64,000 bases of DNA from Selaginella moellendorffii (taxonomy: Eukaryota; Plantae; Lycopodiophyta), in the NCBI RefSeq assembly GCF_000143415.4, contig NW_003314390.1, forward strand, positions 148,973-212,972, read 5' to 3'. The translations under genes were made by a program, and so were the position numbers. Positions 20,414-55,303 of the stretch are shown piece after piece. Within the stretch, counting starts at the first letter, position 1. Every line of letters starts with the position of its first letter. The notes below the pieces were generated by a model. The model searched no databases. It saw nothing but the letters and a program-made list of their open reading frames with translations, and was not told where the DNA came from.

Positions 20414-22512
20414 GGGCCTGCTACTTCAAGAGTGGAGCCCCGTGGATAAGAATGCCTGGTGTACAACTTAGCACACACGAAAACGACAACGAAGCTAGCG
20501 AGGTAAGTTCTTGTTATAGATCAGTACGCTTTGATTCCGGTTCTCGTTTTCTCTTTGGGGCCCTTTCGCAGAGCTCGTGGATGACTTGTGGAAGAAGAAG
20601 AAGATGCCAAATGCAAAGAGGGCCATACTCTCTCGCTCGCCAGGGCCCAAAGATGGATTCTTCGGGACTTTCCATACATGGAGGTATGGTTGCTTTCTCT
20701 TTCTCTTTTTTTGTTTTCTTTTTCTCCTGTCTGTTCTACTGTTCACTGTGAGCAGCAGTGATTGACGCTTGCTACTCGTAGATGGCCAAACGCCGCGCTA
20801 GGCACGAAGCTCCAAATCGATCCTTTGGAGTGACGCGGCGAATCAATCAATATTTTTTTCTTTCCAGTGGCATGAGCTTTCTCGATTGACTGGACGTGTA
20901 GATGAGCAGTGCCCGACCACTGTGAGCAATGCATTGTCTATGATACTGCACGAGCAGTGGCAGGCAGCGTGGTCTGCTCAGCTGTTTAGCTCCACGACGT
21001 TTACTACGAAAGAGATTCGCGGCTGCGAGTGACGCAAAGCTGGTACTATTACTTTTCTCTCGTCTTTGTTAGCGGCAACCACGTTTTTGGTGCTGGTTTC
21101 CTTCTGACGCACTTGGTTTTTTCAAATGTTTTCCCAGATGCTCGTCTCTCTCCTCGATAGCTACGACGAGTCATTTGTTTTGTTTCCCGAAGGCGGTGCC
21201 TGCGACTAAAACAAATCGATCAGCGTCACGAACAGACCTCCAGGACCGAGGCGAGCGAAGCAACAAGTTGGCGGCCATCGCAATCAGATCCTGGAGCACG
21301 GATGATTTGGCCCCTGACGCGGACGATTGACGAGCTGAGGTGGTGCAGTATATATTGTATTTGTGGAAAGATAAAGAGGTACGTGGTTTTGCTTTCCTCT
21401 CTGCTTCTTTCGCCATAGCCTGGGAAAGCAGACAAAGTGGTGTCTCTCGCTTGGCAGGGAAGAGGGTCCTTTGTTTGCTGCTGACGCTTCCACATGAATC
21501 AAATATCGTCAGCACAGTGCGAACTCCACATGGCAAAGGTGCAGCCGCAGCAATCCTTGCAGCTTTATTCCAATGACTCCCATCGAGACTTCAGAAGAAA
21601 AAAAACCAGTCAATTTCCTCGAGAGCAGGCTAAGCTCCAAGGTACCTTTTGTTTTCTCGCATGGTTTATAGATCGATCGCTCTCTTCCCCCATGGTTTAT
21701 AGATCGATCGCTCTCTTTACAAGTGGTGGCTTTGATTCCACATCCAGATCGAGGGCGATTGCCATCGGAAAACAATGCCCTGGCGGAGATTTTTTCCATG
21801 GATAATCGATCAAATGATATAGAATTTAGAGGCACCGATGGAGCGATCGGGCGATATCTACAGCGAGCGATCGATGGAGCTGGAGAGCGTCTCATCGTCG
21901 CCAGTGAAAATAATGGCACCTAACACGGGCTCATGGGTTCCTTTCGTGGCGGCCATTCGTAGCATGTGAACGCTACGAGGGCAAACTCAAATGCGTGACG
22001 TTATTCCTGCGAATATGCGCTTTGACCCTTGGGTTGGAGGGAATCGAACCGGCAGTTGTGCTGTTAACCGGGGTTAGGGTCCCTTTCCAACGCTGCTACG
22101 GTGCTACAGTGCGCGGTTGCCCCTTTTTATAACGCGGGCACCAAAAGCATTCCAAGAAGAAGAGAGAGCGTTCTTGACGGAGGCGGCGTAGGCGACGGCA
22201 GCAGCGTCTTGGCGCAAGGTTTGATTCTTTGGTTTCTCTCATCGGCGCCGGCGCGCGATCTTAGATCGCCGCCTCGCAATCGGCGAATTCGCCTCTTTTC
22301 TCTCTGTTGCATGCGCCGATTCATCGATTGATCGCTGGTTTCGTGGCTCCTGTGCTGCGCAGGCTTGGATTCGTGCGATATTTCGTCCTGGGGAAAGGCG
22401 AGGATCCGGTTTTCTTCACATTCGAGTAGGAAATTTTTTGGCGTGGTTTGGATTGGAATGGGACTCATCCCTTGTTCTTGTGGTGTGCTTCTTCTTCTTC
22501 CAGGCGGATTGA

Positions 22513-22521
22513 ATGTTTTAA
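22513..22521 (+). promoter_or_regulatory. SAMDC 'tiny' uORF (Met-Phe-stop) overlapping the small uORF start
   Basis: ATG TTT TAA whose last A is the A of the next ATG (TAATG), just after a 5'UTR intron acceptor at 22503; the canonical plant SAMDC leader layout. Confidence 0.9.
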
Positions 22522-22738
22522 TGGCGTCGACGCGTGATTCTAGTAAATCGAAACGCGACTCTGTCCAATACGAGTCTCCTCTCGGCTACAAGATTGAGGA
22601 CATCAGGCCTGACGGTGATATTGAAAAGTTCCGCTGCGCTGCCTACTCAAACGTAAGCTCCTTTGTTTTCTCTGCGAGAAATGCGTCGCGAGCTAATTCG
22701 TCCCTTCTTCTTTGCAGTTCGTCCGAAAACCATCCTGA
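22521..22738 (+). CDS. SAMDC 'small' uORF conserved leader peptide, 50 aa, intron 22653-22717
   Basis: MASTRDSSKSKRDSVQYESPLGYKIEDIRPDGDIEKFRCAAYSN|FVRKPS matches the plant consensus YEAPLGYxIEDVRPNGGIxKFxSAAYSN|CxxKPS. Confidence 0.95.
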
Positions 22739-22960
22739 TACCCCCCAGAAAGAAGAGCCAGTAGAGTAGGCTAGGGCCTTCCCCTCGTCAAATCCTTTGC
22801 TTGGAGTCTCCTTTACCTCTTGGAGCTGGTCTGCGGCATGCTGCACGGTGGCAGATCAGCTCCCTGCTCTCGGGAGCAGCATTCTTCCCGCTAGCTAGCT
22901 AGCTCTTTAGCCGGTCTCTCCTCTCTTTTTTTTCCCCTCCGTCTCCTCTCACAAGCCAAG

Positions 22961-25423
22961 ATGGGTGTCTCTTTCATTCCCGCTGATGAAGTCATGGAGC
23001 CTGTTGTTGCCAGTCCTGGGTTTGAGGGGTTTGAGAAGAGGCTTGAGGTGGAATTCTGGGATCCTCTTGGTTTTGCCGATCCGAGTGGTCTGAGAGCAAT
23101 CCCCCGCAATGAGATTGACACTATGCTGTCAGCGGCCGAGTGCACTATTGTCTCTGCTTTGAGCAACAGTCACTTTGATTCCTACGTGCTGTCTGAGTCG
23201 AGCCTCTTCGTCTATCCTTCCAAAATCGTCATCAAAACCTGTGGAACCACGCAGCTCTTGAAGGCCATCCCCCTGCTTCTCAAGTCGGCCTCGTTTATCT
23301 CCCTGGAAGCCTGCCGCTGCAAGTATAGCCGAGGAACTTTCATCTTTCCCAGTGCCCAGCCTTCGCCTTATGGAAACTTTAACGAGGAGGTGGTGATCCT
23401 GGAGAAGTACTTTGGTCACCTTGGAAACGGAGGCAAGGCTTGCGTCATGAGTGACGCCTCTAAGATGCACAACTGGCACGTTTATGTTGCTGCGTCGGAA
23501 GTGGCCCCCTTGAGCTCTGAGACATATACAATGGAGATGTGCATGACGCAGCTTGATCGCTCTTCGGCAGCTCTCTTCTACAAGTCGCCGTTCTACCGGT
23601 CAGCTGCTGACATGACTCTCCTGTCCGGCATCCGGAACCTCCTGCCTCACTCGGAGATATGCGACTTTGCCTTTGATCCCTGCGGCTACTCAATGAACAG
23701 CGTCGAAGGCAACGCCCACTCGACCATACACATAACTCCGGAGGATGGTTTCAGCTACGCAAGTTTCGAGACCATGGGTTACAGCCCGTGCATGCTCGAC
23801 TTGGGAAGCTTGGTGGACAGAGTGCTCGGCTGTTTCAAACCAGCAGTTTTCAGCATCTCACTCTCGACGGCTGGACTCTGCCACTCACGCGACGCTGGGT
23901 CCTGGGGGGTGCCGGTTTGTCCACGAGGCTACGTGTGCAGTGGGACTACTCGCCATGAAATGCCCGGGGGGAGCTTCGTGGTGTACCACACTTATACGAG
24001 GATCTTAGGTGGCGACTCGACAGTGATGCCGCTTGCCCTGTTCCCGGCACTGGAGAAGGTGGCGAGCAATGGTTACAAGAGCAAGAACAGCGAAGCATCT
24101 TTGAAGCCGTTTCTGTACGGTGTGCAGCCCTTACGTGAAAGTGGTGGGGCGGAGGTCATCGGTCCTACTGCCAGGGACATGGATTCATTCATCAGGAAGA
24201 AGATCCAGTCCACGGGCCGAGAGGATGCGTTCTATGTTCTTGACTTGGCAACTGTTACTAGGCTGTGGAAGATTTGGAAGTCGGCCATGCCGAGAGTTAA
24301 CCCGTTCTACGCGGTCAAGTGCAACCCCGACCCGCAGCTCCTGTCCATGCTGGCGGCACTGGGAGCCGGTTTCGACGTCGCGAGCAAGGCAGAGCTGGAA
24401 GCTGTGACACAACTCGGGGTGGCGCCACGAAACATTATATTTGCGAATCCCTGCAAGCTTCCTTCGCATATCACTGAAGCTGCTAAGGCGGGGGTGGTGT
24501 ACACGACGTTTGATTCCGAGGGAGAGCTCTACAAGCTTAAGAAGTACCATCCACAGGCGGAGGTTCTCCTGAGGTTCCGTTCCGACGACACCGGTGCTCG
24601 CTGCCCGCTGGGCGTCAAGTATGGTGCCGAGTGGGACGAGTGCTATCATCTGCTGGAGGTGGCCAAGACGCTGGGCATCAAAGTCGCAGGTGTGGCCTTC
24701 CACGTCGGGAGCGGTGCCTCGGACGTGAATGCCTTTGCGGAGGGCATCAAAGCCGCGAGGAAGCTGTTCGACATGGCCGAGAGCTTGGGTCTCCCGAGGA
24801 TGACAATGCTGGACATCGGTGGCGGGTTCGTGTCGGATGGAGGAGCCGGCGTCAAGTTCGCGGCCGCGGCGTACGAGATTGGCAACGCGCTGGAGGAGCA
24901 CTTCCCGCTGGAGACGATGGCGGACGTGAGGATCATCGGCGAGCCGGGCAGGTTCTTCGCGGAGGAGGCCTTCAGCCTGGCGGCGCTCGTGTTTGGCTGC
25001 CGGGTCCGGAGGCGCGAGGAAGGCAACAAGACGGTGGTTGAGTACTGGATCAACGATGGCATCTACGGCTCCATGAATTGCTTGCTGTACGACCACGCAA
25101 CGCTCTCGGTACGGGCGCTTCCAGTGGCGAGCAGTGGCGGTGGCAGCAGCAGCGGCAGTGATTGCGAAAGCTCGTCCGAGGATGAGGAGGACGATGCGCC
25201 GCTGCTGGACGTGGAGCTCCATCCCTCCATCATCTTTGGGCCGACTTGCGATGGACTGGACACGGTGCTGAGCGATGTGTGGCTTCCGCGGCTCCAGTGT
25301 GGGGACTGGCTCGTGTTCCCTCGCATGGGGGCTTACACCAAGAGCGCTGGATCCAGCTTCAATGGCTTCGCGGTTCCAGACGCTACGTTCTACGTTCACT
25401 GTGGAGCAGCGCCAGAGATGTGA
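22961..25423 (+). CDS. SAMDC-ODC: Bifunctional S-adenosylmethionine decarboxylase / ornithine decarboxylase fusion, 820 aa, intronless
   Basis: N-half: GFEGFEKRLE, YVLSE|SSLF, KTCGTT, PCGYSMN, TIHITPEDGFSYASFE. C-half: PFYAVKCNP, FDVAS, IIFANPCK, FHVGSG, DIGGGF, EPGRF, DGIYGSMNCLLYDH, FGPTCDGLD, MGAYT, FNGF. No stop between the halves. Confidence 0.95.
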   Translation: MGVSFIPADEVMEPVVASPGFEGFEKRLEVEFWDPLGFADPSGLRAIPRNEIDTMLSAAECTIVSALSNSHFDSYVLSESSLFVYPSKIVIKTCGTTQLLKAIPLLLKSASFISLEACRCKYSRGTFIFPSAQPSPYGNFNEEVVILEKYFGHLGNGGKACVMSDASKMHNWHVYVAASEVAPLSSETYTMEMCMTQLDRSSAALFYKSPFYRSAADMTLLSGIRNLLPHSEICDFAFDPCGYSMNSVEGNAHSTIHITPEDGFSYASFETMGYSPCMLDLGSLVDRVLGCFKPAVFSISLSTAGLCHSRDAGSWGVPVCPRGYVCSGTTRHEMPGGSFVVYHTYTRILGGDSTVMPLALFPALEKVASNGYKSKNSEASLKPFLYGVQPLRESGGAEVIGPTARDMDSFIRKKIQSTGREDAFYVLDLATVTRLWKIWKSAMPRVNPFYAVKCNPDPQLLSMLAALGAGFDVASKAELEAVTQLGVAPRNIIFANPCKLPSHITEAAKAGVVYTTFDSEGELYKLKKYHPQAEVLLRFRSDDTGARCPLGVKYGAEWDECYHLLEVAKTLGIKVAGVAFHVGSGASDVNAFAEGIKAARKLFDMAESLGLPRMTMLDIGGGFVSDGGAGVKFAAAAYEIGNALEEHFPLETMADVRIIGEPGRFFAEEAFSLAALVFGCRVRRREEGNKTVVEYWINDGIYGSMNCLLYDHATLSVRALPVASSGGGSSSGSDCESSSEDEEDDAPLLDVELHPSIIFGPTCDGLDTVLSDVWLPRLQCGDWLVFPRMGAYTKSAGSSFNGFAVPDATFYVHCGAAPEM

Positions 25424-25658
25424 TCGTTCGTCCAGTTTTTCTTGTGTGTTTCGTTTTTCCGGGGAGCGTTTGATCGGTTTTGAGGCGCTCCTCGCGTTTT
25501 CGTTTCTTTTCCTTGTTTGCTTCTTTCTTTGAAAAATAAAATTTGTAGTTTAGGATATCCGTTTGCTGCCACGTCAGAAGATTGACAGCCACGTCAGAAG
25601 TGAAGATGATGACCAGGAACGTCGTTGACCAGATGAGTCAGCCCTAATATTTGAAAGG

Positions 25659-27338
25659 TCAAACGACTCCAGCCGCGACTGAGACATACGACGGAGGATC
25701 TTGGGGCTTGAGCGCCAGTAGCTCTTTTGCTGCTTGTTCCGCAAGGTCTCGGTTGCTGTAACGTTTGCATGCCGCGAGCAGCGAAGCCCACTCCACGTCG
25801 TTTGGAAGGAATGGCATGGTTTGGATGAGATCCATGGCGTCGTCGAGCTTTCCGGCCCGTCCCAGCAGATCGACCAAGCAGCAAAAGTGCTCCCTCAGCG
25901 GCTCCACCTCGTGTTCCGATTGCATCGCCAGGAAATGGTGGCGGGCGTCGTCCACGCTTCCCTTGTGGGTGCACGCCACGAGAATGGCCGCGAAGGAGAC
26001 CGCGTTGGGTCTCACCCCGGTCTGCATCATCTCCCGGAAGAGATGGCCGGCCACGTCGCTGAATTCGCTGCTGTGGGCGAGCGCTCCCACCATCGCGTTC
26101 CACGACACGAGATTCCTCTCGGGCATTTGCTCGAACGTGAGCTTGGCGTCGCTCGTGGCTCCGTTTCGAGCGTAGCCAGCGAGGAGGGTGTTCCAGGAGA
26201 CTGTGCTCCACTCGGGCATCCGATCGAACGCGAGCTTGGAATCCAAGACCCGTCCCGCCAGAGCGTAGGCTCCCACCAGCGTCGTCCATGTCACGACACT
26301 CTTGGGCTCGGAAACTCTATCAAACAGTGCCTTTGCTTGCGAGAGTTTTCCACTCACGGCACACGCCTGAATCATCGCGTTCCACGAGCAGATGTTCTTG
26401 TCGGGAATGGAGTCGAAGGTGGCTTTGGCTCGATCGTAGTCTCCTGCATTTGCATACACCGCCAGCAGCGTCGTCCACGACACAACGCTCTTTTCCGGGA
26501 TGGATTCGAACAAGATTCTCACTTCGTCGTGGGCTTCCGCGTCCGTGCATGCCTGCAGCATCGCATTCCACGACACCACGCTTCTGCAGGGCATTCTCTC
26601 AAACAGTGCTTTCGAGAGATCCAAATCTCCGGTTGCGGCACTCGCTGTGAGCATGGCGTTCCAGCACACAGAATCCCTTGAAGGCATTTCAACCAGACAA
26701 TTCCAAGCATCGCCCATCTTGCCGTTTTGTGCATAGCCAGTCAACATAGCCGTCCATGAAACAACATTCTTCTCAGGCATACTGTCAAAAATAGCTTTTG
26801 CCGCCTGCAAATGCCCTTTTCCGGCAAATGCAGTAACAATGATCGTCGACGACACTGCACACCACCTTGGCATTCTATAGTACACTAAATTTGCATGAAA
26901 GATTTCATCATTCTGTGTGAAACCTCGTATTAGTGCGTTCCACGACACGTTGTCTCGCTTTTCCAGGCCCCTAAAGAGCTGCTCTGCCTTGTAACTTTGC
27001 CCACCTTGGGCATATGCTGTTATCATCGCGTTTGAGGCCACCACGCTGCGATCCGGCATTGTGTCGTAAACCTCCTTGGCCTTGTCCATGTCGCCGTTGC
27101 TTGTGTAGGCACCGAGCATGATACTCCACGAGAAATCGTTCTTCGGATTGATGGCATCGAACACCTGCCTTGCCTCGCTTGGGCTCCCACACTTGCCATA
27201 CATTTGCACCAGGAGATTTGCGAGAAAGCGATTGAGGCATTGGCGGCTCTGGATTCGATCGTGAACACGCCGCAACTCGTCCAGGTTCTTGATGTTCTTG
27301 AGAATCCCTGCAAAGAATGCCTGCCCTGAGGTTCCCAT
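25659..27338 (-). CDS. PLS-class pentatricopeptide repeat protein (short-repeat-rich, E-type C-terminus)
   Basis: LVQMYGKCGS, many 31-aa FxxMPxxxVVSWNAML repeats, EHFCCLVDLLGRAGKL, WASLLAAC; intronless, 559 aa. Confidence 0.93.
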   Translation of the reverse strand: MGTSGQAFFAGILKNIKNLDELRRVHDRIQSRQCLNRFLANLLVQMYGKCGSPSEARQVFDAINPKNDFSWSIMLGAYTSNGDMDKAKEVYDTMPDRSVVASNAMITAYAQGGQSYKAEQLFRGLEKRDNVSWNALIRGFTQNDEIFHANLVYYRMPRWCAVSSTIIVTAFAGKGHLQAAKAIFDSMPEKNVVSWTAMLTGYAQNGKMGDAWNCLVEMPSRDSVCWNAMLTASAATGDLDLSKALFERMPCRSVVSWNAMLQACTDAEAHDEVRILFESIPEKSVVSWTTLLAVYANAGDYDRAKATFDSIPDKNICSWNAMIQACAVSGKLSQAKALFDRVSEPKSVVTWTTLVGAYALAGRVLDSKLAFDRMPEWSTVSWNTLLAGYARNGATSDAKLTFEQMPERNLVSWNAMVGALAHSSEFSDVAGHLFREMMQTGVRPNAVSFAAILVACTHKGSVDDARHHFLAMQSEHEVEPLREHFCCLVDLLGRAGKLDDAMDLIQTMPFLPNDVEWASLLAACKRYSNRDLAEQAAKELLALKPQDPPSYVSVAAGVV

Positions 27339-45728: not shown

Positions 45729-47300
45729 TCACACGAGGAGATTTACGAGTAGAAGCAACAGTAACAGGAATGGAGAGTGGAGGAGCGATTGTCGTGCGGC
45801 GTTTGGAAGTCCCGGGTATGAATCTGGAGCTGGAAGAACACACTCCTCGCCATTGAATAGCACCTTGTGTGGAAAAGCCCAGCCTTTGGAGAGTGAGAAC
45901 AACGAGGGATCCTTTTGGAATAGCATCTCGGACTGGACCACTCCATTCTCTCCAGCTTCTAGTAGCATGTCGTTGTAGCTGCGAATTCCCCAGAACATAT
46001 TGGTGTCATCTGCGAAACTAAGTGTGAGAAGCGAGAAGAACAAGCGATGGCTGCTTTACGTACCACCGTGGATTGGCAACCGAGTGCTGTTGAAGCTAAA
46101 CACCTCCTTGAGCTGTTTGAAGTTGGGGTGCTGGACGACGAGGTTCCAGTGCGTGTAGTTCTGGAGGTGCCGGTTGAGAATGCTTACTTTGGAGCGCCAG
46201 TAGCCTTTGTAGTTGTTCTTGACGTGCCAGTGGATCTTGATCGGGCACATATCTTTGGAGCATTGGAACGGGGCCTGCTTGTGGAGATTCAAAGCCGTCG
46301 CTATGCCAGGAGTTTGGAATCCATCGTCAGTTCTGGAAAGTCACAGGAAAAAAGCTTAGAAGTAGTTTTCAAAATGAGGAACTCTTACGAGCTGATGTTG
46401 CACAAACGTTCTCCTGCCTTCGGTTTTTGCGTGCAGTCGCATGCACAGTCCTTGCAGGGAACGACGTCGGGATTGTAAAAGGATGAAAACGAAACGCAAC
46501 AAGATGGTGTTCGACGTAGCTTGTAGGTGCAAGAAGACTGCCATGTCACTGGAACAAAGAAAAAAACTATTAGTAAGGGAGAGGATGGCAAAGAAAAACA
46601 GAAAGAAGGAAAGAAAACAAACTGTATGCTCGGCGTCCATGTTGTCCATCCGGTATCAAGCTGGAAGTAACATTCGTTGGCGTAGAACACGAGTATCCTG
46701 GGATGGAAAACGATAGAGGAACATCAGGTGGTCTTCTCGCAAGGCCAACTTTCATCACAAACGAAGCAATGGATGTCGAGGGATCCTGCACAGCAGACGA
46801 TAACACTCCACCCCTGCAGCAATTCGCGGTCTGGAGAGTGCCAGGAGCTTCTGGCTGGAGATCTATCATCACCGGTCTCGGATGGCAGGAGTGAGGAGAG
46901 TTCTCTTCCTCGACTCGAGCACAGTCGCCTTGATCTATGGCTTGAGCGCCTTGGACTTCCCATATCACCTCCTCCTTGCTCCATTCCCAGCCGAAGCTCC
47001 ATCCCGGACGAGCTTCGATGTGCCTGTAGAGCTGCTGGTTTTCGATCTTTACAGAAGCCTGATTGATCAAAGACAAAGTTAAGCTAAGCGCACAAACAAT
47101 GAAGAAAGAACTACGAAGGAAAACTGTAACCACCAACGAAGAGAAATGCGAAGAACACATACCACATAGCCATCGCCCTGATACCAGTTCAAGATATCCC
47201 AAGTGACGACGATGCTCCCTCTCTGATCCAAAGGATCCACAGCACAATCTGCAAGAAATGCCGCCAAGATCAGCAGCGCAATGGCGCGCGGCACACGCAT
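45729..47300 (-). CDS. COBRA-like GPI-anchored protein
   Basis: Signal peptide, DPLD..GSIVVTWDI, NCCRGGVLS, CCVSFSSFYN, CPIKIHWHVKNNYKGYW, GWAFPHKVLFNGEEC, hydrophobic C-terminal tail. Confidence 0.93.
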
Positions 47301-49692
47301 TTTGGAAGGAGGAGAACTTACCTCTGGACAATCCGCCCGGGCCTGTGTCGCCATCGCTTCCTCGCTCTTGCCAAAATCTAAAGAGCCCTAATTTGTCCTC
47401 AAGGAGTATTCGCGAATATGCTCAATTGTATTACATTAATAAGTTTAAAGTCCCCCAATTTTTAATTTCAAGTTTTCTTCAGTGCTACTTATGCACACTA
47501 GCATATCCCATAATATCTATTTTAGGGTTTGTTATAATGGATCGAGAGAGTTCACATTGAAGCAGGTTTGATGTCTAGAAACTATTTGGGATAGCCCAAA
47601 TCTCTCCAGCAACGAATCAAAGACTTTCTCTTCGGTTCGAGGGAAGGCCCGTCCCACAACAAGGAGTTCCTGCATAGCATCCAAAAGAATAGATCTCCGC
47701 ATTTTGCAGATGCCCACTTGAGGCAAATGCTAGAATTGTGAAGATGGCATGAGCATGTCAATGTCCTCTCAGTCTCAAAGATTCCCTGTTATCAAGGTCA
47801 AAATGGATTTCACCTCATAGATGACCATTCTCAGCACCATCGTACCAACATGTGTTTTGACTATTTGGTTCTTCCTGTACATAGGGCGGACGCACCATAA
47901 GCCGGCCATAACTGCACCAATGGCTGGCCACATTTGATCCATTACATATTTTAGTTTTCTTGGGATGAATTTGCAGCACAATACCCTGGTTGTTGAAAAG
48001 ATGCCTGAACCCCATTGCAACCACTCAATTTAGCAAAGTAATAGATGCCCCGGGATTGAAGTATTGAAAGAAAGTTCTATACAAGAATATGATGAACCTC
48101 AAGAAATTGAAAGAGGTCGTGGATTGAGATGGCAATTTGTGCTTCAATATGTTCTTGAGATGAATTTTTCTAGATAAGTATTTCTAATCTAATAAAATGT
48201 CTCCTTTTATAAGATTTCTTTGAAGTTTTTCAGCTTAGCTTGAGAGAGCTTGTTGTTTGACAGAGGACGTATCTTAAATAAAAGCCATAGGATACGATTA
48301 GGGTTTTTCATTTTTTAGGCTGATGAAGAGAGCAAAAGTCTCAAACAACTTTTCTGGCCTTTGGAGGTGAGCTCTGACAATAGCGAGAAAGATTATAAGA
48401 TTATAACCTAATCCAAACGAGAAATACTATACACAACTCATATGACACTGTGGATTGCCGTGAGGCTTGAGCATGCCAAAGAGCCTAAGCGTAGATGTGA
48501 ACATCTCTCTATGATAATTTCAAAAAGAGAAAACAAGCAACTCCTTTCCAGGTTCAATTCTAATGTACTTGCATACTTTGAATAACGAAACTTTATTTTT
48601 CTCGATTTTCAAACCTCTTGAAGCTTAGCACTCATTGAATGGGAGTCATAGAGCTCATGGAGACACAAGCCATCAGCGTGCACAAACTACTTCCTCTTGC
48701 AGAAAAGTGGATAAAAGAAACACAGGCTAAATATCTATCCATTGGTATTTGTTCTTGGCCTTGCACTTTTGCTGGACTTCTTCTTCAAATTCGGCTGTTC
48801 TTGGGACCAACCTTCAAGTAGCAATCTCCACACAACAACCAAATAGACCAGCTTGAATCTCCCGGCTCTCAAGTAGTTTATGTGGTTCAAGGCATATGCG
48901 GAACTTTGAGAAGCCGAAAGGAGATTTGAACAGATGCCCGTCTTGGTAAAGCCTGATTTTGGCATTTGCCTTGAGAGGGCATCTGTTCCTTTTATGGTCG
49001 TGAGCGATCCTGTTACAGCCATCTTTAAAGCAGCTACGAGAAAGACATTTGATGCACAGAGAGTGGTGATTGTAGCTATCCGCAAATCATACTATGGTCA
49101 GTACTTCCCTTTGAGCTCCTGCTGAGCTTCCGATCTCAAATCTTACAGATGCCCACTCCGGCATATGCTTCTGCACATAGGCTTCCTGGACAGCCGGGAG
49201 CGTCCACTTGAGCATCCTCGAGATGGCACGCAGCTCTTGCTCATACATCTGCTGTTGCTGGATAGTGGAGCATTGATATGGTATCCATCAGGTACGAGAG
49301 CTTTCCAACCAGAATCGTGGTTTCCTCGTTGAAGAACGGCTGATACAAGTGGGACGCGTTGAAGTTCTTCACATTGAGCTTTCCTTGAGTCTCTTTTGGA
49401 TCTTGTCCTGGAACACCTTGAGCAGCTTCAGCAAATGTAGACTTTCCCTTGATCATCGAGTCCTGGAAGTTCTCGCACTAAAGAAACGAGTGCCAAGGTG
49501 CCAAGTTCCAAGAGCATGGACTGATTCATAATCCGAGGAGAGGAATTCGTCATAAGGGTTGCTTTAGTTGAATCAAGCCCGCTTTTCATCGCAACTAGGG
49601 CTAGATCGGACGGCTTTTATTGATGGAAATAAATCAACGGCTAGATTCAAAAACAAAAAAACCAATTGGAATAGGGTTTAGGGTTCTTGGCT

Positions 49693-51489: not shown

Positions 51490-51781
51490 AAAGAGAAAGA
51501 AGAAGAAGAGATGAAAAAAAAAAAATTTCTCCTTTCTTTGTCGAGGTTTGGTCGTTTGTATCAGACCGTTAAGATTTCTGTTAACGCCAACGGTCTTGAC
51601 AGGTGGACGGTAGAGATCTCGCCGCGTGGGCGGCGGAGCTCGTTGGAAATGTGACTAGGCAGTGAAGGAAGGGAGCGTTCTTTTTAGGGTTCTTCCTTGG
51701 TGGCCACGCAATCCACGCGAGCGCGATGGCGGGCGACGCCATCTCGCTCTAGCATCCAGGGGGGTCCATCTTTTGGATCCA

Positions 51782-53468
51782 ATGTCGAGGAAGCAGCGGG
51801 ATCCAGAGTCGCGGCAGAAAGACAGTGGCAGCTACTGCTGGAATTGGAAGAAGTGCAGCGCAGTCGCCTCTCCAGCTCTCGCCATCGCATTCGCCTGCTC
51901 CCTCGTCTATCTCCTCGTCCTGATCTTCGCAAGAAAGCCCTCTTGCCTCGTACATTCTTCCCGTTCCTCTTCTTTCTCCTCCATCGCTTCTTCCACTTCC
52001 TCCTCTTTGCCCTCTGCCAAGACCAAGCCCACTACTTTCTCCTTCGTGGACGTGGAGACCAGGCCAATCGAGGACGACGACGACGACGATAGCAGCGATC
52101 CAGCGGGCAAAATGGCGAGCTTGGGAAACATCGTGTTTGGGATCGCCGCCACTGCCCGGCTATGGGATCGGCGTAAATCCTACGTCAAGCTCTGGTGGCG
52201 GCCCAACGAGATGCGCGGATTCGTGTGGTTGGACGAGGCGATCCAGAACTACTCGAGCGGCGCCCTCCCGCCTTCCAGGATCTCGGGCAGCACTGCGGGG
52301 TTTCGCTACACGCGCCGCGGCGGGCGGCGGGCAGCCATCCGGATATCGCGCATCGTGTCGGAGACATTCCGTGTCGGGTTGCCGGATGTCCACTGGTTCG
52401 TCATGGGCGATGATGACACGATCTTTGTCCCGGACAACCTGGTCAGGGTGCTGGCCAAGTATGATCATCGCAAGCTCTACTACATTGGCGCCAGCTCCGA
52501 GAGCCACCACCAGAATCTCATGTTCTCCTACGGCATGGCGTATGGCGGCGGGGGATTTGCTATAAGCTATGCTCTCGCCAGCGCTCTCGAGCAGCGCCAC
52601 GACGAGTGCCTGGAGCGGTATCCTTTTCTCTACGGCAGCGACGATCGCATCCACGCTTGTATGTCGGAGCTCGGCGTTCCCCTGACGAAGGAGCTCGGCT
52701 TCCACCAGGTAAAAATCCGATTTTTAGTTCAAGGATCTTGTTTTGATCTCCTCCTCTTGCAGCTGGATGTCCATGGCGATGTCTCGGGACTGCTCTCGGC
52801 TCATCCGATCGCTCCCTTCATAAGCATGCATCACCTGGACGTCATCCATCCCATTTTTCCAGGCGTGGGCCAGGCAGCGGCGCTTCGCCATCTCTCCAAG
52901 GCGGTCGACATCGACCCGGCCGGGATCTTCCAGCAGTCGATATGCTACGACCGCCAGCGCTCCTGGTCGATCTCGGTCTCGTTTGGCTACATGGTGAAAG
53001 TGATCCGAGGCGGCCTCAAAGCTCCCAGGGACTTGGAGACCCCGACCCGGACGTTCATGAGCTGGAACCGGAGATTCGACGAGGACGGCTATTCTTTTAC
53101 GAGCAGGCCTCCTCCAAAGTCGCCCTGTGACGTTCCCCTCGTCTTCCACATGAAGGAGGTGGCGTACGCGAGCCGAGATGGGATGAGCGTGAGTAACTAC
53201 ACTCGGACCAGGACGAAGAAGCAGGGCGGTGACTGCCCTTCCAAGTCGGCCGAGGAACTGCGGTGGATTCAAGTCCTCAAGGAGCGCACCAAGGATTCCT
53301 GGTTTGTGGTAATTGAAGTTTGTGCTCTCCCACTTTCTATCTCTTTCTCACGGAAAGCGTTTTCGTGTATAGGCTCCGAGAAGACAGTGTTGCCAGATCA
53401 TGAGTGTCGCCTCGCACAGCATGCGCCTACTGGTAAGAGACTGTAGAGACGGAGAACTCATCCTTTGA
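51782..53468 (+). CDS. DUF604 / fringe-like glycosyltransferase (intact copy)
   Basis: Type II TM, IVFGIA, WWRP, RISRIVSE, WFVMGDDDT, MAYGGGGFAISY, YGSDDRI, GFHQ|LD, SMHHLD, APRRQCC; two short introns. Confidence 0.92.
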
Positions 53469-53888: not shown

Positions 53889-55303
53889 TTAGATTAAACT
53901 GATATACAGGAAACTCTTCTCTCGAGCACACGAGCGGCCCTGTCCAAATTCACACAGCTTCTCTATCGGCTTGACAAAGGCTGGATCCGGTCTCGCTGAC
54001 TCCACCGCCCGAGTAACTTGGAACATCACCATGAACGCGTGCTCGATCTGTCCAGCGCTGCAAAGCCCCTGGATCAAAACGCTGTCGGTCGAGTCCGGAA
54101 GGCTGCCCTCGGCGATCATCTCCTCGAGGACCCTCTCCGCCTCGTCCATCCTGCCGAGCTTGCAAAACCCCTCCACAAGGCTGTTGTAAGTCGCAGTGTT
54201 TGCTCGGCACCCCTCCTCCGCCATCACCGTGAGAAATCTGGAAGCTAGATCCATCTCACCGGTTTTGCAAAGTCCGCGACGTAGGCATTGCACACCAGGA
54301 GATTGGGAGTGTAGCCACATACCACCAGCTGCTCCAGGAACGCTCGAGCTTCCACCATTCTCCCCATCTCCGCAAACTTCTGGACCATGATGCTGTAAGT
54401 CACGAAGTTTGGCTTGCACTTGCTGCGCGCCAACGTTTCCAGGAGCTTGGCGGCGCTGTCCATCTGATCGGTGTTGCAGAACAGCTCCAGCAGCGCGTTG
54501 AAGGTGACGATGGTCGGGCAGAATCCCATCTCCGATGCCGAGCGCTTCCTCGGGCCGTGCCGCCTTGCAGAAAGCGTGGAGGATCAAGTTGAGCGTCAGA
54601 CTGTTGGGCTCGATGTTCCTGAGAAGCATTGTCTCCATCACCTTGTATGCCTCATCCTGCCTCCCGGATTTGCAGAGAAACTCCACCACCGGATTGAAAG
54701 TCACAGCCGTCAGACCGTCAGAGCAAAACCAGCGCTTTCCATCACTCCCATGAGCTCGAGAGCCTCCTCGAGCAGGCCAGCTTTGCCAAGGCCCGTGGCC
54801 ATCGCGTTGTAAGTCACCCGGTATGGAGCCACGCCTCGCTTGGCCATGGCCTGGAGCTCTTCACGGGCCTCCTGGATCCTCCCGGAGCTACACAGCACAT
54901 CGATGAGCGTGTTGTAGGAGACGCCGTTGGGATTGCAATCCGTCTCTTGGCCTCGTCCACAAGCCCAGCCTCAGAGAAACCTGAGGTTGTGGAGAACGAC
55001 CAAGCTCCCGGGGCTCGGAAGCCTCGATTCCAGAAGCTTGCAAATCTCTGTCACCGATTCTTCGTCCACTCCCGCGATGTCGACTGGAGGATCGAGCTCG
55101 TCAGGCTGCCTCTTCCTCCTGTATCGAGATTTCTTACCTGGCCCCTGGCATGAAAATATTTGCTCCGTGGCAGCAGTGGCACTGGCATTCTTCCGGAAGC
55201 TCACATTTTGCTGGACGGCCTGCGCGCTGCAAGAAATCGGAGCCAAAGATGTCGAGGATGAGCTCGCGATCGCCACCGGAATGGCGCCGGCTAGCAGCGC
55301 CAT
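53889..55303 (-). pseudogene. P-class PPR pseudogene with a transit-peptide-like N-terminus
   Basis: 35-aa repeats (TYNSLVEGFCKLGRMDEA) split across three frames by frameshifts and deletions. Confidence 0.8.

What the first reader, a model, noticed from the sequence alone, without database searches (positions are those of the whole stretch)
22961..25423. Land-plant bifunctional SAMDC-ODC fusion: both entry enzymes of spermidine synthesis on one polypeptide
Seen: one uninterrupted, intronless 820-aa ORF. The N-half is a plant SAMDC with its self-cleavage site intact (E79|S80, codon at 23198). After a linker of about 60 aa comes a fold-type III PLP decarboxylase with the PLP lysine (K453, 24317), catalytic cysteine (C763 in GPTCD, 25247) and the NCLLYDH specificity segment typical of eukaryotic ODC. 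Known: plants normally encode SAMDC and ODC separately, and Arabidopsis has no ODC; the textbook AdoMetDC-ODC fusion, in the same domain order, is from Plasmodium. Inference: this is an independent, convergent fusion coupling putrescine and decarboxylated-SAM supply. Self-cleavage would give a 79-aa beta chain and a pyruvoyl alpha-ODC chain that dimerises through ODC. I cannot confirm whether the plant fusion has been reported.
Basis: partly seen in the sequence, partly recalled or inferred. Interest (0 to 1): 0.93.

Follow-up and report, generated by a model that had tools for sequence, protein, structure and literature searches.

The report
Ancient SAMDC-ODC fusion gene, spikemoss
This spikemoss gene really does encode two polyamine-making enzymes (SAM decarboxylase and ornithine decarboxylase) as one protein, but it is an old gene shared with liverworts, ferns and green algae, not a new or convergent land-plant invention.

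Summary
ORF 22961-25423 (+) is an uninterrupted 820-codon gene. It has a plant-type S-adenosylmethionine decarboxylase (SAMDC) domain, a roughly 55-residue linker and a eukaryotic ornithine decarboxylase (ODC) domain, and every catalytic residue I checked is present. A spliced RNA-derived contig covers the whole ORF in one piece. All three introns lie in the 5' leader, and splicing there rebuilds the classic plant SAMDC tiny/small overlapping uORF pair.

The reading "independent, convergent land-plant fusion" is not supported.
- Full-length collinear orthologues occur in liverworts, ferns, streptophyte algae and many chlorophytes.
- Same-order fusions also occur in Cyanophora, Diphylleia, Chromera and apicomplexans.
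- On the ODC tree, a shared origin of the green and apicomplexan-type fusions is not rejected (AU p 0.85).
- On the SAMDC tree, stand-alone land-plant SAMDCs nest among the fusions lineage by lineage. They look like fusion copies that lost ODC.

As I recall (paper not held here), this kind of fusion was reported for the green alga Micromonas in 2011. I found no paper on the land-plant genes.

The scan found this before on other DNA: finding s1-332851 is an 823-codon copy, probably the other haplotype, with the same verdict.

Enzyme activity, self-cleavage and oligomer state are inferred, not shown.

The parts
22152..22216 (+). 5' leader exon 1. Its start is the end of the contig, so the true transcription start may lie further upstream.
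   Evidence: Spliced contig X1 record 1.
22217..22360 (+). Leader intron 1, 144 nt, GT..AG when the cut is read 2 nt to the right.
   Evidence: The joint is seen in runs X1 and X3.
22361..22425 (+). 5' leader exon 2.
22426..22503 (+). Leader intron 2, 78 nt, GT..AG.
   Evidence: The joint is seen in runs X1 and X13.
22504..22652 (+). 5' leader exon 3, holding the tiny uORF and the first part of the small uORF.
22513..22521 (+). Tiny uORF (ATG TTT TAA, peptide MF). Its stop shares one base with the start codon of the small uORF.
   Evidence: Reconstruction of the spliced leader.
22521..22738 (+). Small uORF of 50 codons, split by leader intron 3. The peptide ends ...AAYSNFVRKPS and matches the AdoMetDC leader peptide family.
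   Evidence: Pfam PF08132, E 3.5e-16; spliced reading frame.
22653..22717 (+). Leader intron 3, 65 nt, GT..AG, inside the small uORF.
   Evidence: The joint is seen in all four runs laid.
22838..22894 (+). Third short uORF of 18 codons; conservation not tested.
22718..25483 (+). Last exon: the end of the leader, the whole main ORF and at least 60 nt of 3' UTR.
   Evidence: One contig piece with no gaps.
22961..25423 (+). Main ORF of 820 codons plus stop: the SAMDC-ODC proenzyme.
23018..23995 (+). SAMDC (class 2 AdoMetDC) domain, residues 20-345.
   Evidence: Pfam E 2.9e-103; potato SAMDC 1mhm E 3e-83.
23195..23200 (+). E79|S80 self-cleavage and pyruvoyl-forming site within YVLSESS.
   Evidence: conserved in at least 90% of 31 fusion orthologues.
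23996..24160 (+). Inter-domain linker, residues 346-400. Residues 365-386 are predicted disordered.
24242..25330 (+). ODC domain (PLP-binding barrel plus C-terminal sheet), Pfam residues 428-790. Homology to solved ODC structures runs over about residues 401-815.
24317..24319 (+). PLP-binding lysine K453, equivalent to T. brucei ODC K69.
   Evidence: invariant in 31 orthologues.
25124..25201 (+). Ser/Gly/acidic low-complexity insert in ODC, residues 722-747. It is predicted disordered and carries an in-frame 9-nt allelic insertion after 25139.
25247..25252 (+). Catalytic C763 and D764, equivalent to T. brucei ODC C360 and D361.

Best explanation
This is the Selaginella moellendorffii member of an ancient green-lineage gene that encodes SAMDC and ODC on one polypeptide. 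It is transcribed as a single mRNA. The spliced 5' leader carries the plant SAMDC tiny/small overlapping uORF pair, so polyamine-responsive translational control probably sets the level of both enzymes at once (inferred).

By homology, the proenzyme should cut itself between E79 and S80. That would give a 79-residue beta chain and a pyruvoyl-bearing alpha chain that stays joined to ODC. The ODC part should form the obligatory head-to-tail dimer, with K453 from one subunit and C763 from the other at each active site, giving an (alpha-ODC/beta)2 particle.

The two reactions are not consecutive. The likely benefit is therefore fixed 1:1 production of putrescine and decarboxylated SAM for spermidine synthase, not substrate channelling.
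For: Gene and domains:
- The ORF and its domains are confirmed.
- All checked SAMDC residues are present: F21, E22, E25, E79/S80, C94, S244, H257, E261. R27 occupies the position of human L13, which as I recall is the potato arginine that replaces putrescine activation.
- All checked ODC residues are present: K453, D472, E478, R538, H581, GGG 620-622, E661, R664, D711, H712, C763, D764, Y792, F800.
- These residues are invariant or at least 90% conserved across 31 fusion orthologues.

Expression:
- A spliced, hence RNA-derived, contig of 3045 nt covers the leader and the whole ORF.
- Two further runs have contigs that bridge the linker.
- The dual uORF is restored by splicing and matches PF08132.

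Selection and structure:
- Allelic SNPs are 11 synonymous to 6 non-synonymous, pN/pS about 0.17, spread over both domains.
- The AF2 model has two confident domains and a floppy linker.

Orthology:
- Orthologues occur across Viridiplantae and the window protein nests among them in both trees.

Mechanism by analogy:
- The non-consecutive-reaction and balanced-output arguments come from the Plasmodium enzyme review (PMC3253432).
Against: - No enzyme assay, processing evidence or oligomer data exist for any plant fusion that I could find.
- Logan contigs are short-read assemblies and cannot prove that single RNA molecules span the whole gene.
- The runs are only guessed to be RNA, although the splicing argues strongly that they are.
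- Relative domain orientation in the model is uncertain (pTM 0.55).
- The uORF function is inferred from seed-plant SAMDC work recalled from memory.
Confidence: 0.85

Rival explanations
1. One reading: the fusion arose independently and recently in a land-plant lineage, convergently with Plasmodium.
For: Seed plants and mosses have separate SAMDC and ODC genes. In the 150-row ODC tree the myzozoan fusions fall outside the green clade.
Against: - Collinear fusions occur in liverworts, ferns, all streptophyte algal grades and many chlorophytes.
- The window protein is nested within them.
- The ODC tree backbone is weak.
- An AU test does not reject green and myzozoan ODC domains as one clade (p 0.85).
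Confidence: 0.03
2. One of the two domains is catalytically dead and serves as a regulator or scaffold, like the trypanosomatid prozyme or antizyme inhibitor.
For: There is no biochemical evidence for any plant fusion. The genome also has stand-alone SAMDC paralogues (P0298, P0304), so SAMDC activity need not come from this gene.
Against: Every catalytic and cofactor residue checked is intact and conserved across 31 orthologues. Allelic changes are mostly synonymous in both halves.
Confidence: 0.07
3. The PLP domain decarboxylates lysine or arginine instead of, or as well as, ornithine. Lycophyte L/ODCs and the chlorovirus ADC are precedents.
For: Related stand-alone enzymes of club-mosses are named lysine/ornithine decarboxylases (P0127). 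The chlorovirus ODC homologue 2nv9 is an ADC.
Against: - D711 and D764, which bind the distal amine of ornithine in T. brucei ODC, are kept.
- H712 after the aspartate is kept. As I recall, it is replaced in legume L/ODC.
- The domain sits in the fusion clade, not in the stand-alone lycophyte clade.
Confidence: 0.1
4. It is an assembly or annotation artefact, or read-through of two adjacent genes.
For: None beyond the rarity of the architecture in seed plants.
Against: - Contigs from four independent studies agree with the junction, and one spliced contig covers the whole ORF.
- A second allele carries only an in-frame indel.
- Dozens of orthologues share the junction.
- The neighbours are ordinary plant genes.
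Confidence: 0.01

Closest known systems
Green-lineage AdoMetDC-ODC fusion. As I recall, first noted in Micromonas by Green et al. 2011, Mol Microbiol 81:1109 (paper not held here). Database orthologues include the Marchantia polymorpha 'S-adenosylmethionine decarboxylase' of 859 aa.
   Same: - Same domain order.
- Same three Pfam domains.
- 40-58% identity over 96-100% of the length.
- Same clade in both domain trees.
- PMC6356823 Table 2 lists one Micromonas accession under both ODC and SAMDC.
   Different: This is the lycophyte member. I found no paper that describes the land-plant genes or tests any of them.
Plasmodium falciparum bifunctional AdoMetDC/ODC.
   Same: - N-terminal AdoMetDC, a hinge, then C-terminal ODC on one polypeptide.
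- AdoMetDC not expected to be stimulated by putrescine.
- Likely role in balanced output of the two products (PMC3253432).
- Related myzozoan fusions (Chromera, Selenidium, Cardiosporidium) are not rejected as sister to the green ODC clade.
   Different: - The Plasmodium enzyme is much larger (about 170 kDa per chain), with parasite-specific inserts. Here the protein is 820 aa with one 26-residue insert.
- The myzozoan SAMDC domains score only 53-64 bits against the window domain, whereas human SAMDC scores 164 bits.
- No plant-type uORF is known there.
Canonical plant SAMDC genes, such as potato SAMDC (PDB 1mhm).
   Same: - 283 bits to the 1mhm alpha chain.
- Intronless main ORF with introns only in the leader.
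- Tiny/small uORF pair overlapping by one base.
- R27 at the putrescine-mimic position.
   Different: This gene carries a full ODC domain after the SAMDC C-terminus. The tree suggests the stand-alone genes are derived from fusions, not the reverse.
Eukaryotic ODC (T. brucei 1f3t, human 1d7k).
   Same: 345 and 323 bits respectively, with all active-site residues aligned.
   Different: It is tethered to SAMDC and has a Ser/Gly/acidic insert before the C-terminal sheet. No antizyme-type regulation is implied.

Membership tests
Class 2 (eukaryotic) pyruvoyl AdoMetDC | Sequence match to the family profile. | tested here: met
   PF01536 E 2.9e-103, covering profile positions 3-342 of 343.
Class 2 (eukaryotic) pyruvoyl AdoMetDC | Glu-Ser self-cleavage motif and the catalytic Glu/Cys/Ser/His set. 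| tested here: met
   YVLSESS 75-81, E22, E25, C94, S244, H257 and E261 align to human E8, E11, C82, S229, H243 and E247.
Class 2 (eukaryotic) pyruvoyl AdoMetDC | Autoprocessing to a pyruvoyl enzyme, and SAM decarboxylation. | not testable with these tools
   Needs protein expression and an enzyme assay.
Plant-type SAMDC gene | Tiny and small uORFs overlapping by one base, with the conserved leader peptide. | tested here: met
   ATGTTTTAATG at 22513-22523; a 50-codon uORF after splicing; PF08132 E 3.5e-16.
Plant-type SAMDC gene | Introns confined to the 5' leader, with an intronless main ORF. | tested here: met
   Three GT-AG introns at 22217-22717; the ORF is contiguous in a spliced contig.
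Eukaryotic fold-type III PLP ornithine decarboxylase | Both ODC Pfam domains and a close match to solved ODCs. | tested here: met
   PF02784 E 5.2e-73 and PF00278 E 5.1e-16; 1f3t E 6e-102.
Eukaryotic fold-type III PLP ornithine decarboxylase | PLP lysine, the Gly-rich phosphate loop, the catalytic Cys, and the Asp pair that binds the distal amine. | tested here: met
   K453, GGG 620-622, C763, D711 and D764.
Eukaryotic fold-type III PLP ornithine decarboxylase | Ornithine-specific decarboxylase activity. | not testable with these tools
   Needs an enzyme assay.
Green-lineage SAMDC-ODC fusion orthogroup | Collinear full-length similarity and placement inside the clade in both domain trees. | tested here: met
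   (96-100% coverage); ODC streptophyte clade at SH-aLRT 96; SAMDC embryophyte clade at 97.
Plasmodium-type bifunctional AdoMetDC/ODC | Same domain order on one polypeptide, made from one transcript. | tested here: met
Plasmodium-type bifunctional AdoMetDC/ODC | Common descent with the myzozoan fusions. | tested here: inconclusive
   They are separate clades in the free trees. The one-clade constraint is not rejected (AU p 0.85). No Plasmodium sequence itself and no non-plant stand-alone SAMDC were available.
Plasmodium-type bifunctional AdoMetDC/ODC | Large parasite-specific inserts and chains of about 170 kDa. | tested here: not met
   820 aa, with only a 26-residue low-complexity insert.

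The most novel reading that the evidence does not exclude
The SAMDC-ODC fusion is a single very old eukaryotic gene, shared by green plants, glaucophytes, Diphylleia and the chromerid/apicomplexan line and therefore including the 'unique' malaria enzyme. The familiar stand-alone SAMDC and ODC genes of land plants would then be its fission products, with SAMDC copies losing ODC repeatedly in separate lineages.
Probability: 0.3. Interest if true: 0.7.

Novelty: new member of a known kind. Interest (0 to 1): 0.42.

Why it matters
Textbook plant polyamine biosynthesis treats SAMDC and ODC as separate genes, and a 2011 malaria review calls the AdoMetDC/ODC fusion unique to Plasmodium (PMC3253432). 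This locus and its orthologues show otherwise. Non-seed plants and green algae routinely make both enzymes as one protein, and here (and, from Pfam hits in the gene models, in Chlorokybus and Closterium) the gene sits behind the polyamine-sensing uORF pair.

That gives a compact, soluble-sized relative (820 aa against chains of about 170 kDa) for studying how the two activities are coupled. It also suggests where the stand-alone plant SAMDC and ODC genes came from. For this window in particular the finding repeats one the scan has already followed up on the other haplotype.

Tried and rejected
- **Literature.** Seven full-text searches found no paper describing a plant SAMDC-ODC fusion. Green et al. 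2011 could not be opened by DOI or PMC id, so its Micromonas statement rests on my memory plus the duplicated accession in PMC6356823 Table 2.
- **Large AU test.** The AU test on the full 150-row ODC tree did not finish in three runs. I replaced it with a 59-row subset.
- **ODC relic in a stand-alone SAMDC.** The C-terminal tail of stand-alone Selaginella SAMDC P0298 gives only a non-significant match to the ODC start (E 0.96), so I make no claim.
- **Taxon names.** Several divergent fusions (P0371, P0376-P0378, P0380, P0382-P0384) carry no name in the sources.
- **Not done.** I did not run fold searches because the sequence matches were already decisive. No Plasmodium sequence and no non-plant stand-alone SAMDC were among the proteins the tools returned, so the SAMDC tree has no independent outgroup.
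Full report
**What is there**

The window holds an uninterrupted 820-codon ORF at 22961-25423 on the + strand. Pfam places an S-adenosylmethionine decarboxylase (SAMDC) domain at residues 20-345 (E 2.9e-103). The two ornithine/DAP/arginine decarboxylase domains follow, from residue 428 to 790.

Against solved structures:
- The C-terminal half matches Trypanosoma brucei and human ornithine decarboxylase (ODC) at E 6e-102 and about 4e-95.
- The N-terminal half matches the potato SAMDC alpha chain at E 3e-83.

E79|S80 lies in YVLSESS with the serine codon at 23198. K453 is at 24317 and C763 at 25247, and CLLYDHA spans 707-713.

**Active sites**

From the printed alignments, every residue I checked is present.
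- SAMDC, by human numbering: F7, E8, E11, E67/S68, C82, F223, S229, H243 and E247 correspond to F21, E22, E25, E79/S80, C94, F238, S244, H257 and E261.
- ODC, by T. brucei numbering: K69, D88, E94, R154, H197, G235-237, E274, R277, D332, C360, D361, Y389 and F397 correspond to K453, D472, E478, R538, H581, G620-622, E661, R664, D711, C763, D764, Y792 and F800.

In an alignment of 31 named fusion orthologues these positions are invariant or at least 90% conserved. R27 stands where human SAMDC has L13. As I recall from the potato structure paper, this arginine substitutes for putrescine activation in plant enzymes. It is invariant in the fusions.

**Expression and gene structure**

The runs that hold this stretch are small assemblies of one organism, from seven studies. 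When laid on 21400-26400, one 3045-nt contig (X1) maps as four blocks: 22152-22216, 22361-22425, 22504-22652 and 22718-25483. Three GT..AG introns of 144, 78 and 65 nt are removed. The same joints appear in other runs.

Splicing shows that the contig derives from RNA. It covers the whole ORF and the linker in one piece. Contigs from X9 (23528-25557) and X13 (22741-24298) also bridge the linker. Short-read contigs cannot prove that single molecules span the gene, but nothing suggests a break.

All introns lie in the 5' leader. Joining the exons gives two overlapping uORFs:
- a tiny uORF, ATG TTT TAA, at 22513-22521;
- a 50-codon small uORF at 22521-22738, interrupted by the 65-nt intron. Its start codon shares one base with the stop of the tiny uORF, and its peptide ends AAYSNFVRKPS.

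The small uORF matches the AdoMetDC leader peptide family at E 3.5e-16. An intronless main ORF, leader introns and overlapping tiny/small uORFs are, from established work on seed-plant SAMDC genes that I recall, the signature of plant SAMDC. Here the same control region sits in front of both enzymes.

**Selection and structure**

The runs reveal a second allele. Of 17 single-base differences inside the ORF, 11 are synonymous and 6 are not, giving pN/pS of about 0.17. They are spread over both domains. One allele has an in-frame 9-nt insertion after 25139, inside a Ser/Gly/acidic insert, which would make 823 codons.

An AlphaFold2 model built on the 31-sequence alignment gives two confident domains (about 23-355 and 388-815). 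The linker (365-386) and the insert (726-747) have low confidence, and the domain orientation is uncertain (pTM 0.55).

**Where it comes from**

The exact protein is called as a gene on scaffold GL377694.1 of assembly GCA_000143415.2. I recognise this as the Selaginella moellendorffii assembly, which agrees with earlier scan notes. The neighbours are ordinary plant genes: PPR, COBRA-like and DUF604.

**Distribution of the fusion**

A full-length search returned more than 100 proteins with the same three Pfam domains, many covering 96-100% of the query (taxon look-ups).
- Liverworts: Marchantia, Riccia, Calypogeia.
- Ferns: Adiantum, Ceratopteris, Psilotum, Pteridium.
- Streptophyte algae: Mesotaenium, Spirogloea, Closterium, Klebsormidium, Chlorokybus, Mesostigma.
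- Chlorophytes: Trebouxia, Micractinium, Nannochloris, Bryopsis, Tetraselmis, Nephroselmis, Cymbomonas, Pyramimonas, Mantoniella, Dolichomastix, Crustomastix.

Gene models from Chlorokybus and Closterium even include the leader-peptide domain. This suggests the uORF predates land plants.

An exhaustive representative search plus domain mapping found SAMDC-then-ODC proteins outside the green lineage as well: in Chromera velia, the apicomplexans Selenidium and Cardiosporidium, the glaucophyte Cyanophora and the CRuMs protist Diphylleia.

**Trees**

In the ODC tree of 150 rows, all green sequences form one clade (SH-aLRT 99). Its streptophyte part (96) splits into two groups:
- a fusion group that holds the window protein;
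- a sister group of stand-alone ODCs from Klebsormidium, Sphagnum, club-mosses and seed plants.

The stand-alone land-plant ODC therefore looks like a duplicate of the fusion that lost SAMDC.

In the SAMDC tree, land-plant sequences form one clade (97). Inside it, stand-alone SAMDCs sit beside fusions of their own lineage:
- the window protein with a Diphasiastrum SAMDC (94);
- fern with fern;
- Calypogeia SAMDC with the Marchantia and Riccia fusions (97).

Forcing the stand-alone SAMDCs into one clade costs 411 log-likelihood units (AU p 1e-9). I named that group only after seeing the tree. Repeated loss of the ODC half, or gene conversion between paralogues, would explain the pattern. Truncated proteins with SAMDC plus a short ODC stub occur in Psilotum, Marchantia paleacea and elsewhere and fit the loss scenario.

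**Relation to the malaria enzyme**

The myzozoan fusions form their own clade (SH-aLRT 98-99). The backbone of the ODC tree is weak, and their position moves between the 150-row and the 59-row analyses. Two constraints both gave a higher likelihood than the free quick tree and were not rejected:
- green and myzozoan ODC domains held as one clade (AU p 0.85);
- all fusion-bearing lineages held as one clade (AU p 0.82).

This does not prove a single origin. It does remove the basis for calling the plant fusion convergent. Pointing the other way, the myzozoan SAMDC domains are very divergent: 53-64 bits against the window domain, compared with 164 bits for human SAMDC. No non-plant stand-alone SAMDC was available to test that domain.

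**How it most likely works (inferred)**

- Translation is gated by the uORF pair according to polyamine level.
- The proenzyme cleaves at E79|S80 to form the pyruvoyl group. This leaves a 79-residue beta chain bound to an alpha chain of 741 residues that continues into ODC.
- ODC dimerises head to tail, so the particle carries two ODC sites and two SAMDC units.
- As argued for the Plasmodium enzyme, the reactions are not consecutive. The gain is therefore coordinated, roughly equimolar supply of putrescine and decarboxylated SAM, not channelling (PMC3253432).

**Novelty**

The protein is already called in the public assembly annotation. As I recall, the fusion kind was reported for Micromonas in 2011. 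A 2018 review table lists one Micromonas accession under both enzymes without comment. A 2011 review still calls the Plasmodium arrangement unique. I found no paper on the land-plant genes.

The scan itself has already followed up an 823-codon copy on another scaffold (s1-332851) and its uORF (s1-332896), with the same conclusion. The +9-nt allele seen in RNA suggests that copy is the other haplotype of this locus.

Noticed in passing
window 25659-27338 (-) and 25296-26128: A 559-aa PPR-repeat gene lies tail to tail with the fusion gene, only 235 nt beyond its stop. One contig (X3 record 16) runs from inside the ODC coding region into the PPR gene, so the 3' ends of the two transcripts may overlap.
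   Followed up: partly
window 25139/25140: There is an in-frame 9-nt allelic insertion (GTGGCAGCA) in the Ser/Gly-rich ODC insert. It would give 823 codons, the length of the copy the scan reported on another scaffold, which is probably the other haplotype.
   Followed up: partly
window 22838-22894: A third uORF of 18 codons lies in the spliced leader, downstream of the conserved pair. Its conservation was not tested.
   Followed up: no
window 24185-25399 (-): A 404-codon antisense ORF lies opposite the ODC domain. It is probably a by-product of the GC-rich coding strand and was not searched.
   Followed up: no
proteins P0299 (Psilotum, 526 aa), P0316 (Marchantia paleacea, 562 aa), P0314, P0386, P0387, P0390, P0396: These proteins have a full SAMDC domain followed by only a short N-terminal piece of ODC. 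They could be decaying fusion copies, alternative transcripts or truncated gene models.
   Followed up: partly
protein P0298 (S. moellendorffii stand-alone SAMDC, residues 369-394): The C-terminal tail aligns weakly (E 0.96) with the WKSAMPRVNPFYAVKCNPD start of the ODC barrel. This echoes scan note s1-380565 about an ODC relic at a SAMDC stop codon, but it is not significant on its own.
   Followed up: partly
proteins P0374 (Diphylleia rotans), P0375 (Cyanophora paradoxa), P0408 (Chromera velia), P0418, P0487: Same-order SAMDC-ODC fusions exist in a glaucophyte, a CRuMs protist, a chromerid and non-Plasmodium apicomplexans. The architecture is therefore far from unique to malaria parasites.
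   Followed up: partly
proteins P0377 and P0380 (unnamed, from Logan assemblies): Their SAMDC domains nest inside the chlorophyte fusions next to Crustomastix. Their ODC domains fall far from the green clade on a long branch. This is either a long-branch artefact or a swapped domain.
   Followed up: no
window 46570-47331 (-), 51662-53446 (+), 53889-54704 (-): These are ORFs for a COBRA-like protein, a DUF604/Fringe-like protein and a second PPR protein: ordinary plant nuclear genes in the neighbourhood.
   Followed up: no
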